From Fonticula alba ATCC 38817 (Eukaryota > Protista > Nucleariida): a stretch of DNA of 38,393 bases. Below, piece after piece: positions 18,448-24,056 of this stretch. A model generated the notes under the pieces. It had not been told where the DNA came from. It saw only the letters and a list, made by a program, of their open reading frames with translations, and ran no database searches. Both the position numbers and the translations under genes were made by a program. Numbering within the stretch: position 1 is the stretch's first letter; each line of letters begins with the position of its first letter. The stretch is from NCBI GenBank assembly GCA_000388065.2, contig KB932209.1; one strand, written 5' to 3'.

Positions 18448-19282
18448 AGAGAGGGAAAGGGAGAGAGAGACCCCCGACAGGCGCGCCGCGCTTGGTCGTA
18501 TGCCGCCCTTTCCCCCCATCCCTGGCCCTGGAGCGGGGAGACTCCTGTTCCGGTGGTCTGTGCCCGGCTCCTGTGCCCGGTGGTAGGGGGATGGAATGTT
18601 CCAAAGACAGGAGGGGACAATGGGCAGGGACCCCGGCAGGGGCGGGAGAGGGCGGCCACATAATAACGGCGGTGAGCAGGAACAGGCCAACGTCGAGGGG
18701 CTCTTTCTCTCCCCCGCCGGGCGCGTATTGTTTTCTCAATCTCGCGTCCCGCATTTTTCGTGCCACCCCTCCACAGTTCCCAGAGCCTTCGCGCCATTTT
18801 TCTGGCGGCGGCAGGCCGTTAGCGTTTGGGATCACATGCTCATTATAGGTCACACGACGATGCACGATCTTTCCCGCCGTCGATGGTCCCGCCGGCCGGT
18901 GCCCAGCCGTGTCCCCCCCCCCCCCCACCGGCCAGCTGTTCCGAGCGGGGAGGACCCGGCGGCCTGTGTGTGGGGCAGGCGTGGAGGTCGGCCGGGCTTG
19001 AAGGTGACAACCGCCAGCCGCAGGGGAGCTAGATTGGCCCTTGTCCGGGGGGGGGGGGGGGGGGAATACTGGACGTTCTTACCCGCTGCCCGTGCCGTCG
19101 GGACGCGCACGTTGGCCCTTTTGTGCGACTCCCTGCTCGGTACAAGCCCCCTCCCAGCGCCTAAACATCTTCTCCACTGCCCCTTCCTCCCCTCGGCCTC
19201 CCTCTCGCCCCCCCCCCCTTTTGGTCTCCTCCCTCCTTCCTACACCTTCGCTCTTCTCTCCCCCCTCTGCCGAGCGCACGCC

Positions 19283-22145
19283 ATGAAGGCCTCCGCTAGC
19301 GAGCGGAAGCCGGTGCTGTCCCTGGCCACGGCGGTCGGCCCGACGGCCGCGCCAGGAAAGGCCTCACCCGGGACATCCAGCCAGTTGGCTGGCTCCGCCG
19401 CGGCTGGAGGCAAGCCGTCCCATGCCAAGGCCACCCCTGCGGAGCATGGATCCTCGACCGGCTCCTCGGCCAGCTCCTCGGCGTCCTCCTCTTCGAGCAC
19501 CCTTGCCCGATCGGGGCCACCGCCGTCGACGCCTCTGCCAGCCCCGATTCGGTCGCCGACTCTGGCATCGACATTGACCGTGGCCAGTCCATGGAACACC
19601 GAGCATGCGCGGGCCTTGCTAGTCGGCCAGCGTACCTCGGTCGCGGTCGGCCGCCGGGTGTGGTACTTTTTCGACGGTGCGCACATTCTGCCCTCCCCCC
19701 GGGCTCTGGCCGGGCAGCTCCTTTCATTGGTGGCCATTCTCCCCGCCCCATCTGGATGATGCGCCATTGGCTGACGGATCTCTCGTATTCCCCTTGGGAT
19801 GCTCGGGTTGTGGTCCTCTCTTCTTCCTCCTCCTTCTCTCTCTCCCCCCCCCCTGACACGCACACAGATGAATATGCCTGTCACTCCTTCGGCCGTGGGC
19901 ATCCTATTCAGCCCTTCCGGGCCCGCCTCACCCACCAGCTCCTCGTGCAGTACAGCCTCCTGCGCGAGTTCATCCTTTGTGTGCGTTTTCACCGACCCGC
20001 CCATCGCTCTCGGCCAATTGCCCTCTCCTCGACTCACGCGTCCTCCATCCTCTTTCCGCTGCCCTTTTTGTCCCCCCCCCCCCCTACAGGGCTCTTACAA
20101 CCGGGCGGCCTTCGCCGACCTGACGCGCTTCCACACCGATGACTATGTGTCATCGATTGCCTTGGCCGCGGCGGCCGCCATGGCCGACAGCACCGGATCC
20201 ATGGCGTCCTTGCGACGGAGTCGCGATGTGGCCAATGTGTGTGCGGCCTTTGGCATTGTGCCCGATGGCGATTGTCCGCCCTTCGACGGGATGGACACCT
20301 TTTGTTCGATCTACGCCGGGGGGTCGCTGGCCGGGGCGCGGGCCCTCAATGCTGGCGAGGCGGACGTCGCCATCAACTGGCTGGGGGGCTTTCCGCACGC
20401 GAATCCGGCCAATGCCTCCGGCGGGTCGTTCATCAATGACGTGGTGCTGGCCATCCTGGAGCTCCTGCGCAAGCACCAGCGTGTTCTCTTCATCAACCTG
20501 GACTCCTTCCACGCGGACGCGGTCGAATCGGCCTTCTACACGACGGACCGTGTGCTGACCATGTCCTTCCACCGGTACTGTGACCCGTCGGTGTCCCCGG
20601 CGCCGACCTTCTCCGCGGACATCGTCAACAGCGCGACTCCCAAGCCCGGCACTGCCGGTGCCCGGGCAGGTGCCACGCGAGCTGGTGGGGCTGGTCATGG
20701 CCGGAAGGCGGCCGCCGGCGGCGGTTCGACCGCAGCCTCCACCACACCGGCGACCCTGTCCAGCGTCAATGCCGCCGGAGCCAGCGCCATTGCTGCGGCG
20801 GTGCTCCACAATACAGCCTTCGGGCCGATCTTCCCCGGGACCGGGGCCCCGGGAGACACCGGCGCCCCGGGCCCCGGGCGCGGCCATGCCATTAACATTC
20901 CCCTCTGGGATGGGATTGACGACTCATATGCCGCGAGGCTGTTTACCGAGGTATGTGCCTGGCTGGATGCGGTTGCCTTTGACCTCGGGAGTCCTGCCTC
21001 CCCCCCCCCCCTCCCGTGTGCGAGGTTGTTTTTGACGCAGGTGCCCTGGATCCCCCCGCCCGCCCCCGACTTGCTGCGCAGTCCGTCCGACGGACGGTGG
21101 ATGCCTACCAGCCGAGCGCCATTGTCTTCCGGTGTTCCACCGGCGCCCTGGCTGGCGACCGGTTTGGCACCTTCGGCCTGACCTTGCAGGGTGCGTGAGG
21201 TGTTTCCTCGGTTCGGGCATGCCTGTCCTCGCCTTGCCTTGCCCACTCTGTCCTCACCTGGTTGCTATGTGCTTGGTCACCTCCGTTAGGCTACTCGCGG
21301 ATCTTGGATACGGTTCTCGATTTTGGCCTGCCCGTGCTGCTACTTGGCGGTGGGATGGCCTCCTCGGCGGCCGGGGTCAAGATGCAAGTGTGCTTGTCAG
21401 CCCGGGCGGCCGGGAGGCCATTGCAAATTGGCTCGGCCCTGCCACTGGTGGCCGCCGGCCGGGAGTACTTTGCCCCGGACTTCCGCATGTACATCGAGCC
21501 GCTGATTGGCGGGCATGCAGCCATTGCCGGGGCCCTGGCTGGCGCCTCGGCCGCGGCCCCATCCATCAGCCAGTCATCCAACATTGTCAGTAGCATCGGC
21601 GGTTTGGAGATGGCCGAAATCACGTCGCGTCTGTGCGTCCCNNNNNNNNNNNNNNNNNNNNNNNNNNNNNNNNNNNNNNNNNNNNNNNNNNNNNNNNNNN
21701 NNNNNNNNNNNNNNNNNNNNNNNNNNNNNNNNNNNNNNNNNNNNNNNNNNNNNNNNNNNNNNNNNNNNNNNNNNNNNNNNNCATACCCCGGTCCAGGGCT
21801 CTGTCCCCGCATGCTAATGTCCGGTCCTCCGCTGTTGCTGTCCCTTGGATGTCCCTCTTGCGCATCCGTAGTTCTCTCCTGGATGCGCAGCTGTCAATAG
21901 TCCGCGCGACGCGCCTGGCGCAAGATGCCCCGTTGGGGCAGAATGGCGCCCGCATGCGGGACGCCCTTGTGTGCTCGCCGCCTCCCGGGGGGGACACGCC
22001 GGCCGTTTCGCCGGGGTCGCGCCCGACCGCTGGCGACCGAGAGCCCGCGCCACGCGGCGCGGCCGGGCGGAAACGGCACAAGGCTGATTGCGCTGCTCGA
22101 CTATCGGGAGCGGCTCTCGCGCCGGGTGTGTCCTTCTATCTGTGA
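19283..22145 (+). CDS. Class I histone deacetylase homolog (Rpd3/HDAC1-like), predicted catalytically inactive
   Basis: Exons 19283-19676, 19868-19980, 20090-20950, 21082-21190, 21290-21632 and 21872 onward splice in frame. Motifs VWYFFD..FGRGHPIQPFRARLTHQL, RFHTDDY, GDCPPFDG, INDVVLAILELLRKHQRVL, AFYTTDRVLTMSFH, FPGTG, AINIPLWDGIDD, QPSAIV, GDRFG, EYFAPDF. Catalytic residues are substituted (see findings). The 3' end is uncertain: TGA at 22143-22145, or after one more intron TAG at 22517-22519. Confidence 0.9.
21642..21781. other. Assembly gap inside an intron of the HDAC-like gene
   Basis: N run between the donor gtgcgt at 21633 and the acceptor at 21870-21871. Confidence 0.95.
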
Positions 22146-22520
22146 AGGGCACCCGCCCTGCATCTGCATGTGTTCGCCCCCCCCCCCCCCCCCCGCCCCC
22201 CTTTCTTTCTTTTTCCTTCTCTTGCCCGGAGCCGTCTCATGCCCTCTTCCGCTTCCCCCTCCACTTGGGGGGATCCTCTTTGCCGTTTTGCTGAAGGGCA
22301 TTTCCCGATGCTTCGTGTGGCGAGAGGAAATACACCCGATCAGAATGTTTCCTTTTTTCTTCCCCTCTCCCCCCCCCCCTTGCATTGGGGATGCCTGGCA
22401 TGGCCATTACAGCCGCACGCTCGTGGATGGGCCGGCGCAACTCTATGGGTTTATTGTCTTCGGAGCAGGTTGATGCTGTGCCGGTGCCAGGACCAGGAGG
22501 GCGGGAGGCGAGGGGATAGG

Positions 22521-24056
22521 CTAGGTGCATCGATCGCGAGCCGCGTGGAGGAGTTGCTCCTCCAGCAGCGGGAAGAGATTGTCCACGCCACCGTACCCGG
22601 GGAAGTAGTTCAGATCCACGATGAACATCCGGTCAGTGCCCTCCTCGAAAACAATGTCCACACCGAAAAGGGACACGCCCTACAGGGGGGGGGGGGAGCG
22701 GCGGGAAGCGGGCAGCCACGCAGATCAGCATCAAGTACACGGGTGAAAGGCACGGATTTCCCACATGCCAGGCGGAAACGACGAGCACATGCGCGTACCA
22801 TCTCGGCCGCCAAGTAGGCCACGGTTTGCTCGACGCGGGCCTGCTGCTCCGGGGTCAGGGCCACCACGACGCCCGGGTCCAGGGGGACCGTCTCCCGGGA
22901 AAGGCGCTGCGAATCCAGGTGCAGAATCGGCTCTCGAGCCAGGGGCGACCCGGCCGAGGCCAGGTCCACCGACGGCCGGGGGACAATGCTGGCCACGGCC
23001 CCGGCCACAGCGTACGCCTTCCACAGGAGGGCCGGCTGGTGGGGGACACCCAGTTGGAGGGTGCGTTGGCCATCGTCCTCGGCCGTCAGGGTGAACTCCT
23101 CCGAGAGCCAGGCCCCGGGCTGGGCATCCGCAACCGCGCCGGCACGGAAGATGGACAGCCGATGGGAGGCCGGCGTCGAGCAGGCGTCACGCGACTTGAG
23201 GACTGGATCGGAGGGGAGAGCCGGGGGGGGGGGGGGGGATGGTCAGCGGTCATTTACAAATGCAAGGCCGAGGCAGAGGGGAGGGGGAGAGAGCGGGAGA
23301 GCATGTCGGAGAGACGGCCGCAATGGCCGCTGGGGCGCACAGTAGGCGGAGTCATCAGAAGTGGCGCTCTGGGCGACTGTGGTGCGGATGAAGCGCCCGA
23401 GGGCCGCATCATAGGCGGCCCGGCTGGTCAAATCCTCCGGCTCAGGGGCGAAGAGCATCGTTGTGGGGGAGTGGAAGAGGTATTGGCCATTGTGGGAGGC
23501 GGCCCAGCGGCCGGCCAGTGCGGCCAGCGCCTCGCTTGACAGCCACCGATCGGTCAGGATGTGGCACACGTCCAGCGGGTCAACCAGGGCCGGAGGGACG
23601 GCCCCGGGAGGGGGGTTTTCCAGCAGCTGGCGGAGAGCCTGCAGCCGGGCCACCGCACGGGCCATCTTTCCACGCAGAGCCTCATCGGCCGGCGGGCCGG
23701 CCGACAGTTTGCTCAGCCGGGCGTACACCATCTCCGAGGTGAACTTGTGCAAGATGACATCCAGGTCATTCGGCAGAGCGGCCGGGTTGTCCAAATCCAC
23801 GGGTGTCACCGAGCGGAAGGTCTGTCGATCGCTGCTCCGGGGAGCATGGCAGGAGTCCAGGAGCCCGGGAGGGTGGTGGGGGGATTCCGAGGGAAAGGAT
23901 GGTCAGCAGACCGAGGGGCGAAGGGGGAAAGCACCAGCGGCCGGCGCGAGGACCGGGCACGAACCCGAGATACTGCAGAAACTCCTGCATCCGCTGGCTG
24001 TCCAGCTTCTTCTTGGGGAGGGCATAGCCAAGAGCCGGCTTGTCGGCAGGAGGCAT
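22521..24056 (-). CDS. ITPK1: Inositol-tetrakisphosphate 1-kinase / Ins(1,3,4)P3 5/6-kinase (ATP-grasp)
   Basis: ATG at 24056, 4 exons, TAG at 22523-22521. LGYALPKKK, DVILHK, VDPL..LTDR, FLKSR..SHRL, PH..LWKAY, RPSV, GVSLFGVDIV, VDLNYFPGY all match ITPK1 motifs; metal-binding D, D and N are present. Confidence 0.93.

What the first reader, a model, noticed from the sequence alone, without database searches (positions are those of the whole stretch)
19283..22145. Intact class I HDAC gene with a dismantled active site: probable pseudo-deacetylase
Seen in sequence, using HDAC1 numbering: GGLHH becomes GGFPH, so the general base H140 is Pro (ccg, 20393-20395). ASGFCY becomes ASGGSF, so tunnel residue F150 is Gly (20423-20425). 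IDIDIHHGDG becomes INLDSFHADA, so Zn ligand H178 is Phe (20507-20509). CGSDSL becomes CSTGAL, so Zn ligand D264 is Gly (21142-21144). GGGGY becomes GGGMA, so catalytic Y303 is lost (21346-21360). H141, D176, D99 and the structural motifs (GHP, FHTDDY, DCP.FDG, TTDRV, FPGTG, PLxDGIDD, GDRxG, EYF.PDF) are kept. There is no frameshift or premature stop and the splice sites are canonical. Established: these residues are required for Zn-dependent deacetylation; the well-known weak HDACs (class IIa) change only Tyr to His. Inference: a selected, metal-free class I pseudoenzyme acting as a scaffold, acyl-lysine reader or dominant-negative partner in Sin3/NuRD-type complexes.
Basis: partly seen in the sequence, partly recalled or inferred. 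Interest (0 to 1): 0.82.

Follow-up and report, generated by a model that had tools for sequence, protein, structure and literature searches.

The report
Expressed zinc-free Rpd3-like pseudo-deacetylase
The amoeba Fonticula alba makes a correctly spliced message for a histone-deacetylase look-alike that keeps the enzyme's fold but has lost the metal-binding and catalytic residues, so it most likely works without catalysis.

Summary
The six-exon gene (19283-22145, +) is NCBI H696_05179 of Fonticula alba, 697 aa. I add D174N, G302M, K31Q and R306A.

The assembly gap lies wholly inside intron 5. Two RNA contigs join 21632 to 21872 directly and confirm all five GT..AG introns, so the gene is transcribed and spliced as modelled.

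A soil-metagenome strain differs at 10 of about 839 non-coding bases, but at only 1 (synonymous) of about 2005 coding bases.

The fold is intact (Pfam PF00850; AlphaFold model matches HDAC1/2 at TM 0.90). It carries three disordered low-complexity additions, one an 80-residue insert at the pocket rim.

No orthologue turned up in the collections searched (1.8 to 5.8 billion protein sequences and cluster representatives, plus JGI metagenome contigs). Its tree branch is about six times the family median and its placement is unresolved.

Similar degenerate class I homologues exist in Phaeocystis (dN/dS 0.23), Aplanochytrium and unnamed metagenomic eukaryotes.

Verdict: a real, constrained class I pseudo-deacetylase. 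The scaffold or regulator role is inferred. An active Rpd3 paralogue in this genome could not be checked with these tools.

The parts
19189..22166 (+). Transcribed span seen in RNA contigs (5' UTR about 94 nt; no upstream ATG before 19283; 3' end at least 22166)
   Evidence: X6 contig of 2168 nt covers 19189-22125; X7 contig of 2224 nt covers 19193-22166. Both are fully spliced.
19283..19676 (+). Exon 1. Start codon and a 120-residue Ser/Ala/Pro-rich disordered N-terminal extension (19283-19642), then the start of the HDAC core (RRVWYFFD).
   Evidence: (pLDDT below 50 for residues 1-120)
19677..19867 (+). Intron 1 (191 nt, GTGCGC..AG). Carries 4 SNPs and an 8-nt indel in the soil-metagenome strain.
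   Evidence: joints and variant tables
19868..19980 (+). Exon 2. Contains GHP and helix H1 (GHPIQPFRARLTHQLLVQYSL), with K31Q at 19909-19911.
19981..20089 (+). Intron 2 (109 nt, GTGCGT..AG)
20090..20950 (+). Exon 3. Main part of the Hist_deacetyl domain. It holds GGFPH (H140P at 20393-95), ASGGSF (F150G at 20423-25), INLDSFHADA (D174N at 20495-97, D176 kept at 20501-03, H178F at 20507-09, D181 kept at 20516-18), FYTTDRV, FPGTG and PLWDGIDD.
   Evidence: (PF00850, E 3e-33), alignments
20582..20821 (+). In-frame insertion of about 80 residues, rich in Ala/Gly/Thr/Ser, between FHRYC and GPIFPGTG. This is next to tunnel residue F205 at the pocket rim. It is predicted disordered and is retained in the mature RNA, so it is not an intron.
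   Evidence: query 165-243 unaligned; exon 3 contiguous in both RNA contigs; residues 338-420 have pLDDT below 50
20951..21081 (+). Intron 3 (131 nt, GTATGT..AG)
21082..21190 (+). Exon 4. YQPSAIVFRCSTGALAGDRFG, with D264G at 21142-44, R270 kept and L271F.
21191..21289 (+). Intron 4 (99 nt, GTGCGT..AG)
21290..21632 (+). Exon 5. GGGMA (G302M and Y303A at 21355-60), R306A (21367-69), a diverged 302-316 helix and EYFAPDF. Position 21605 is probably a reference error (T should be G, Leu598Trp).
21633..21871 (+). Intron 5 (nominally 239 nt, GTGCGT..AG). It contains the whole assembly gap 21642-21781.
   Evidence: joint 21632 to 21872 in both RNA runs, with no letters between
21872..22145 (+). Exon 6. 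C-terminal helix, disordered Ala/Gly/Pro/Arg tail, a basic RKRHK patch (22068-22082, a candidate nuclear localisation signal by inference only), and stop TGA at 22143-22145.

Best explanation
This is a functional, transcribed gene of Fonticula alba (H696_05179). It encodes a class I, HDAC1/Rpd3-like deacetylase fold that can no longer perform zinc-dependent deacetylation.

What the sequence shows:
- Two of the three Zn ligands are gone (H178F, D264G).
- One His-Asp charge relay is gone as a pair (H140P, D174N).
- The transition-state Tyr and its glycine neighbour are gone (Y303A, G302M).
- The tunnel wall is opened (F150G).
- The fold, the second His-Asp pair (H141, D181), D99, F205 and most structural motifs are kept.

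The protein is therefore best read as a pseudo-deacetylase that is kept by selection. It most likely arose as a fast-evolving duplicate of Rpd3 in the Fonticula lineage.

Its most likely mode of action is inferred, not shown. It would act non-catalytically through the retained HDAC surfaces and its three added disordered regions, as a structural or regulatory subunit that binds or competes for partners of the active class I enzyme. The pocket remnant could serve at most as a ligand or peptide binding site.
For: - Identity and fold: PF00850 hit at E 3e-33. PDB bit scores are HDAC2 271, HDAC1 268, Rpd3 253, Clr6 247, HDAC3 240 and HDAC8 about 145. The AlphaFold core is confident, and Foldseek gives TM 0.90-0.92 to HDAC1/2.
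- Dismantled site.
- Expression and exact splicing: RNA contigs from two samples show all five introns removed.
- Independent DNA from a soil metagenome and from a 2025 run gives the same non-canonical codons.
- Constraint: 1 synonymous change in about 2005 coding nt against 10 SNPs and 2 indels in about 839 non-coding nt. Fisher p = 4e-5. About 17 nonsynonymous changes are expected at the non-coding rate and none is seen.
- A 697-codon frame across six exons is still open although the terminal branch is 2.8-3.1 substitutions per site, against a family median of 0.45-0.53.
- Retention is graded. P0001 keeps 69% of columns invariant in the family, 51% of highly conserved, 26% of mid and 18% of variable columns. 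The 35 lost invariant positions cluster in the four active-site loops: 139-152, 172-185, 260-275 and 302-316.
- Precedent that such proteins are kept by selection: Phaeocystis-type degenerate class I homologues have dN/dS 0.23 with identical degenerate motifs.
Against: - No orthologue was found, so there is no dN/dS and no test of whether the substitutions are old or shared.
- If the single synonymous polymorphism is used as the neutral standard, 0 nonsynonymous changes against about 2.8 expected is not significant.
- In a 65% GC genome long open frames arise easily, so 'no stop codon' is weaker evidence than usual.
- Many replacements go to Gly, Ala and Pro, as relaxed constraint under GC pressure would also give.
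- Two of three InsP-pocket residues and the 302-316 helix are lost, so binding to SANT-type co-repressors is doubtful.
- No partner, localisation or protein-level evidence exists.
- An active Rpd3 paralogue in F. alba was not demonstrated.
Confidence: 0.65

Rival explanations
1. Transcribed gene in slow decay. It would be a redundant Rpd3 duplicate that lost catalysis, is under relaxed constraint, has no function of its own and has not yet acquired a disabling mutation.
For: It is a single-lineage orphan on a very long branch. It has lost 31% of the positions invariant in the family. Many changes go to GC-rich-codon residues. Open frames persist easily at 65% GC. The nonsynonymous deficit is not significant against the single synonymous change.
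Against: After about 3 substitutions per site, neutral evolution should have produced indels, frameshifts or lost splice sites. Instead six exons, five GT..AG introns and a 697-codon frame are intact and used. Substitutions are not uniform: structural motifs are kept and the losses cluster in the active-site loops. Coding sequence has about 20-fold fewer polymorphisms than the adjacent introns and UTRs.
Confidence: 0.15
2. Neo-functionalised protein that still uses the pocket. It would be a zinc-independent binder or enzyme for another ligand, such as an acyl-lysine or small-molecule reader, using the retained H141-D181 pair, D176, D99 and F205 in a widened tunnel (F150G).
For: Retention in the pocket is selective: H141, D181, D176, D99, G149 and F205 are kept while their neighbours are lost. 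Class IIa HDACs set a precedent for reader-like use of a crippled pocket (established knowledge).
Against: Class IIa domains keep the catalytic Zn; here two of three ligands are gone. The loop at residues 271-280 is modelled with low confidence. An 80-residue disordered insert sits at the rim. No ligand evidence exists.
Confidence: 0.12
3. Assembly or annotation artefact, through wrong bases, a mis-joined gap or a mis-predicted exon structure.
For: An assembly gap lies within the span, and one base (21605) is wrong in the reference.
Against: Two RNA contigs and two independent DNA data sets reproduce every exon base except 21605. They also reproduce every splice junction, including the one across the gap.
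Confidence: 0.01

Closest known systems
HDAC1/HDAC2/Rpd3/Clr6 (class I Zn-dependent lysine deacetylases, Pfam PF00850)
   Same: It has the same fold (TM about 0.9) and gives the best sequence scores of all solved structures. Its 113-residue core is 59-66% identical to the best hits, which are mostly fungal Rpd3/Clr6. It keeps GHP, FHTDDY, DCPxFDG, FYTTDRV, FPGTG, PLxDGIDD, GDRxG and EYFxPDF.
   Different: It lacks Zn ligands H178 and D264, general base H140 with its partner D174, Y303, G302 and F150. It also lacks two of the three InsP-pocket residues. It carries a 120-residue N-terminal extension, an 80-residue rim insert and a disordered tail. Its branch is about six times longer than usual.
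Class IIa HDACs (HDAC4/5/7/9) as weak enzymes or acetyl-lysine readers
   Same: They are deacetylase-fold proteins whose main roles are thought to be non-catalytic (scaffold or reader).
   Different: Class IIa domains change only the Tyr (to His) and keep the Zn site and both His residues. They also belong to a different class. Here the metal site itself is destroyed.
HDAC10 C-terminal pseudo-deacetylase domain (PMC5454378)
   Same: It is a deacetylase-fold module that has lost catalytic residues and serves a structural role.
   Different: It is a class IIb domain fused to an active domain within one polypeptide, not a stand-alone class I paralogue.
Degenerate class I HDAC homologues found here in other protists (Phaeocystis antarctica type P0340/P0338/P0370; Aplanochytrium stocchinoi P0146; metagenomic P0064, P0148, P0112, P0108)
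   Same: They are stand-alone class I-like proteins lacking H140, H178, D264 and/or Y303 while keeping H141 and D176. Several share F150G, H33F/Y, G182A, M194L and K200R with the Fonticula protein. The Phaeocystis pair is under purifying selection, with dN/dS 0.23.
   Different: Each scores higher against canonical HDACs than against the Fonticula protein. The tree joins them only weakly (42/47), under conditions that favour long-branch attraction. A fungal-Rpd3 affinity is not rejected either (AU p = 0.42). Common descent is therefore unresolved. None has the Fonticula insertions.

Membership tests
Class I HDAC (Rpd3/HDAC1) superfamily, as a fold and homology group | Hist_deacetyl (arginase-like alpha/beta) domain detectable by profile and by structure | tested here: met
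   PF00850 at E 3e-33. phmmer to HDAC2 at E 2e-79. The AlphaFold model matches HDAC1/2 at TM 0.90-0.92.
Class I HDAC (Rpd3/HDAC1) superfamily, as a fold and homology group | Closer to HDAC1/2/Rpd3 than to HDAC3 or HDAC8 | tested here: inconclusive
   Bit scores are 271/268/253 against 240 (HDAC3) and about 145 (HDAC8). Placement in the tree is unresolved. A clade with fungal Rpd3 is not rejected, AU p = 0.42. Only one certain HDAC3 sequence was in the tree.
Active Zn-dependent lysine deacetylase | Asp-His-Asp zinc ligands (HDAC1 D176, H178, D264) | tested here: not met
   D176 is kept; H178 is Phe and D264 is Gly.
Active Zn-dependent lysine deacetylase | Tandem His with Asp charge relays (H140-D174, H141-D181) and the catalytic Tyr (Y303) | tested here: not met
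   H140P, D174N and Y303A; H141 and D181 are kept.
Active Zn-dependent lysine deacetylase | Measured deacetylase activity and bound metal | not testable with these tools
   Needs recombinant protein, ICP-MS and an activity assay.
Pseudoenzyme (pseudo-deacetylase) | Homologue of an enzyme lacking residues essential for catalysis | tested here: met
   Six of the nine conserved catalytic, metal-binding and tunnel positions tabulated (140, 141, 150, 174, 176, 178, 181, 264, 303) are changed.
Pseudoenzyme (pseudo-deacetylase) | Expressed as a mature, correctly processed mRNA | tested here: met
   Fully spliced contigs in two RNA runs from two samples.
Pseudoenzyme (pseudo-deacetylase) | Maintained by purifying selection | tested here: inconclusive
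   Coding against non-coding polymorphism is 1/2005 against 10/839, p = 4e-5. The frame is intact despite about 3 substitutions per site. No orthologue is available, so no dN/dS; the test against synonymous sites is not significant.
Pseudoenzyme (pseudo-deacetylase) | An active paralogue co-exists in the same genome | not tested
   No tool here searches the F. alba assembly. The protein searches did not list an F. alba Rpd3. The only hint is a canonical KYGEFFPGTG contig in a mixed DNA run.
Class IIa-type reader HDAC | Zn site and His dyad intact, with only Tyr changed to His | tested here: not met
   The Zn site is destroyed and Tyr is replaced by Ala.
Processed or unitary pseudogene | Frameshifts, stops, loss of introns or loss of transcription | tested here: not met
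   The frame is open, five introns are present and spliced, and the gene is transcribed.

The most novel reading that the evidence does not exclude
The Fonticula protein is one member of a widespread class that appears undescribed in the papers I searched. The class comprises stand-alone, zinc-free Rpd3-like pseudo-deacetylases, either ancient or repeatedly evolved. They are also seen in Phaeocystis, labyrinthulids and unnamed marine eukaryotes. They would be retained by selection as non-catalytic regulators of class I HDAC complexes, for example by occupying or blocking the second HDAC position in Sin3-type assemblies.
Probability: 0.2. Interest if true: 0.75.

Novelty: new variant of a known kind. 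Interest (0 to 1): 0.5.

Why it matters
Non-catalytic roles of class I HDACs are debated in animals on the basis of engineered catalytically dead alleles. A natural, selected, metal-free Rpd3-like protein would be an evolutionary experiment of the same kind. It would show which HDAC surfaces matter without catalysis. Fonticula alba is a culturable relative of fungi with a small genome, so partners and phenotype are testable. Comparable degenerate class I homologues occur in abundant marine protists under purifying selection, which suggests the phenomenon is broader than one orphan gene. No paper found here describes a stand-alone class I pseudo-deacetylase.

Tried and rejected
1. Orthologue hunt. 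None of these searches found anything closer than canonical HDACs:
- phmmer of exon 3 against 1.84 billion cluster representatives;
- three word-index searches of 5.8 billion proteins, using the whole core, exon 3 alone and the 113-residue core;
- a peptide-pattern scan of JGI metagenome contigs.
Apparent intermediates are artefacts. P0002 and P0151 are chimeric duplications. P0298 and P0316 are intron read-through. P0326 and P0329 are translations of primate retro-pseudogenes.

2. Search for the active F. alba paralogue. The 30-nt loose end of a canonical-looking contig in run X10 (encoding KYGEFFPGTG) had no exact match in metagenome contigs. That contig was not seen in the F. alba RNA runs, so it may belong to another organism. 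Earlier scan notes hold no class I HDAC entry. High-ranking Logan and JGI hits lack the F. alba amino-acid composition. The question is left open.

3. Subfamily placement by tree. The quick and careful trees leave the protein on a long, unplaced branch. The join with Phaeocystis in the quick tree was flagged as long-branch attraction and disappeared in the careful tree.

4. Common origin with other pseudo-HDACs. This is neither supported nor rejected.

5. The insert as an unspliced intron. Rejected: both RNA contigs retain it and it is in frame.

6. Flanking-gene context. Nothing functionally linked was found.

7. Literature. There is no paper on F. alba HDACs or on natural class I pseudo-HDACs in the library.

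8. The ESM Atlas look-up added nothing.
Full report
**What is there**

The window is from Fonticula alba: NCBI record KB932209.1 of assembly GCA_000388065.2, positions about 503020-525882 around the gene.

I derived a six-exon model by hand from the sequence. The exons are 19283-19676, 19868-19980, 20090-20950, 21082-21190, 21290-21632 and 21872-22145. The model translates to 697 residues and is identical to the deposited protein H696_05179, handled here as P0001. All five donors are GTRYGY (GTGCGC, GTGCGT three times, GTATGT), matching what another reader noted for this genome.

**The gap, expression and base accuracy**

I laid Logan contigs of two F. alba RNA runs from two samples, one soil metagenome and one 2025 DNA run on 19100-22400.

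- Each RNA run holds one contig (2168 and 2224 nt) that covers 19189/19193 to 22125/22166 with exactly my five introns removed.
- The joint from 21632 to 21872 has no letters between. The assembly gap at 21642-21781 is therefore wholly inside intron 5, and there is no hidden exon or frame problem.
- The spliced joints prove that the contigs come from RNA.
- Exon bases agree in all four runs, with two exceptions. At 21605 all four runs read G where the reference has T, so codon 598 is Trp rather than Leu, which is a probable reference error. At 20503 the soil strain has C>T, which is GAC to GAT at D176 and is synonymous.
- The non-canonical codons are therefore real and not read errors.

**The observation**

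HMMER alignments to Clr6 and HDAC2, and a MAFFT alignment with 101 canonical class I sequences, give the residues below in HDAC1 numbering. The numbering was calibrated on full-length HDAC1 4bkx_B and a Saccoglossus HDAC1.

| Changed | Kept |
|---|---|
| L139F, H140P, F150G, C151S, Y152F | H141, G149 |
| D174N, H178F, G180A, G182A | D176, D181 |
| D264G, S265A, L271F | R270 |
| G302M, Y303A, R306A, N307A, W312Q | G300, G301 |
| K31Q | D99, F205 |

All nine catalytic, metal-binding and tunnel positions tabulated (140, 141, 150, 174, 176, 178, 181, 264, 303) are 100% conserved in the 101 canonical sequences. P0001 has changed six of them.

Over HDAC1 positions 9-375, P0001 matches the consensus at 41% of columns. 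The match is graded: 69% of invariant columns (78 of 113), 51% of highly conserved, 26% of mid and 18% of variable columns. The 35 lost invariant positions cluster in the four loops that build the active site: 139-152, 172-185, 260-275 and 302-316.

**Fold and architecture**

- Pfam finds PF00850.
- The best solved relatives by bit score are HDAC2 (271), HDAC1 (268), Rpd3 (253), Clr6 (247), HDAC3 (240) and HDAC8 (about 145).
- An AlphaFold2 model built on a 62-sequence alignment is confident for residues 121-337 and 421 to about 560. Foldseek matches it to HDAC1/2 structures at a target-normalised TM of 0.90-0.92.
- Three regions are predicted disordered and are of low complexity: the N-terminal 120 residues (Ser/Ala/Pro), an insert of about 80 residues (Ala/Gly/Thr) and the C-terminal 70 residues.
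- The insert lies between FHRYC and GPIFPGTG, directly before tunnel residue F205 at the pocket entrance.
- The C-terminal tail includes an RKRHK patch.
- The insert is kept in the mature RNA.
- The loop carrying GGFPHANPANASGG is modelled with low confidence.

**Is it under selection?**

No orthologue exists in any collection I could search. A classical dN/dS is therefore impossible. Three indirect lines remain.

- *Polymorphism.* The soil-metagenome strain differs from the reference at 10 SNPs and 2 indels in about 839 non-coding bases (5' region, introns 1 and 5, 3' region). It differs at only one synonymous site in about 2005 coding bases. Fisher p = 4e-5. At the non-coding rate about 17 nonsynonymous differences are expected and none is seen, p = 3e-8. 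There is a caveat. Synonymous sites are also depleted (1 seen against 6.6 expected). Against that single synonymous change the nonsynonymous deficit is not significant.
- *Open frame despite divergence.* The terminal branch is 2.8-3.1 substitutions per site, against a family median of 0.45-0.53. Even so, six exons, five splice-site pairs and the frame are intact. High GC makes long open frames commoner, so I weight the frame less and the retained, used splice sites more.
- *Non-uniform substitution.* Structural motifs are retained and active-site loops are lost.

Together these favour a maintained protein over free decay, but they are not proof.

**Relationships**

In the 113-residue core the nearest sequences are mostly fungal Rpd3/Clr6, at 59-66% identity. 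This fits a duplication within Holomycota.

The trees cannot place the protein. A quick tree joined it to a Phaeocystis sequence and was flagged as long-branch attraction. A careful tree joined it weakly (42/47) to another group of degenerate homologues. An AU test does not reject a clade with fungal Rpd3 (p = 0.42, log-likelihood difference 6.0).

**A wider phenomenon**

I screened all fetched homologues at nine key positions. This turned up other stand-alone class I-like proteins with dismantled sites:

- a Phaeocystis antarctica type with more than 100 member sequences in marine metagenomes, carrying GGQTH, STDAWHPSG, AGAGVL and GGCGF;
- an Aplanochytrium stocchinoi protein;
- four unnamed metagenomic proteins.

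Three of these (P0146, P0064, P0148) form a supported clade (98/95). Several share F150G, H33F/Y, G182A, M194L and K200R with the Fonticula protein. Each nevertheless scores better against canonical HDACs than against it.

Two Phaeocystis-type genes fetched from Tara and ENA contigs differ by dS 0.16 and dN 0.036, giving dN/dS 0.23, and have identical degenerate motifs. Zinc-free class I homologues can therefore be maintained by selection. I found no paper describing any of them. The only hits for 'pseudo-deacetylase' concern HDAC10 and bacterial enzymes.

**Mechanism**

*Shown:* the residues needed for Zn binding and for the accepted HDAC mechanism are absent, the fold is retained, and the gene is expressed.

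*Established knowledge:* D176, H178 and D264 bind the catalytic zinc. H140 and H141 with D174 and D181 act as the general acid-base pair. Y303 stabilises the oxyanion. K31, R270 and R306 form the inositol-phosphate pocket used by SANT-domain co-repressors.

*Inference:* the protein acts without catalysis, through retained HDAC surfaces (helix H1 and the beta-sheet core are well kept) and its added disordered regions. It would serve as a structural or regulatory subunit that binds or competes for partners of the active enzyme.

The losses of K31 and R306, and the divergence of the 302-316 helix, argue against classical InsP-dependent SANT binding. The 'Sin3/NuRD-type partner' idea is therefore plausible but unsupported. 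A reader role is less likely than for class IIa domains, because the zinc that helps hold the acetyl group is gone and the rim carries a large insert.

**What remains open**

- Whether F. alba has an active Rpd3. No tool here searches its genome. A canonical KYGEFFPGTG contig in a mixed DNA run is only a hint.
- Whether the protein accumulates.
- What it binds.

The surroundings give no functional clue. The convergent downstream gene is an ITPK1-type inositol-phosphate kinase, which is probably a coincidence.

**Verdict**

The pseudoenzyme reading is well supported. The specific role is conjecture. This is a new variant of a known kind, of moderate interest. Interest rises if the protist pseudo-HDACs prove to be a coherent class.

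Noticed in passing
window 21605: The reference has T, but all four runs laid read G (two F. alba RNA runs, a soil metagenome and a 2025 DNA run). Codon 598 is therefore TGG (Trp), not TTG (Leu). This is a probable assembly error 37 nt before the gap.
   Followed up: partly
window about 22521-24056, minus strand (L001:13239-14774): The convergent downstream neighbour carries PF05770, an ITPK1-type inositol 1,3,4-trisphosphate 5/6-kinase. This is curious beside an HDAC-like gene, since class I HDAC complexes use inositol phosphates. However, the pseudo-HDAC has lost two of three InsP-pocket residues, so the adjacency is probably a coincidence.
   Followed up: no
P0340/P0338/P0370; L002:1501-2889; L004:1501-2874: There is a Phaeocystis antarctica-type class I HDAC homologue with a dismantled site (GGQTH, STDAWHPSG, AGAGVL, GGCGF). 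It is intronless, has more than 100 member sequences in marine metagenomes, and shows dN/dS 0.23 between two variants.
   Followed up: partly
P0146/P0395 (Aplanochytrium stocchinoi), P0064, P0148, P0112, P0108: These are further degenerate class I HDAC-like proteins. P0146, P0064 and P0148 form a supported clade (98/95). They share F150G, H33F/Y and G182A with the Fonticula protein. No description of them was found in the papers searched.
   Followed up: partly
window 18917-18927, 19044-19060, 19208-19218, 20075-20085, 22177-22200: Long poly-C and poly-G tracts flank the gene and sit in its introns. The strain indels (19208, 19834) and the places where reads appear cut (22167-22214) fall in such low-complexity tracts. 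These tracts are a likely cause of the assembly gaps in this window.
   Followed up: no
runs X10-X14 (organism B, 2025) and X5, X13 (soil and sediment metagenomes): Near-identical F. alba DNA at about 4x depth turns up in DNA runs labelled as another organism and in soil and sediment metagenomes. The amoeba, or a very close strain, is therefore present in those samples.
   Followed up: no
P0002, P0151, P0298, P0316, P0326, P0329: Several database 'HDAC' proteins that scored oddly are artefacts. Two are chimeric duplicated models, two are translations that read through an intron, and two are translated primate HDAC1 retro-pseudogenes.
   Followed up: yes
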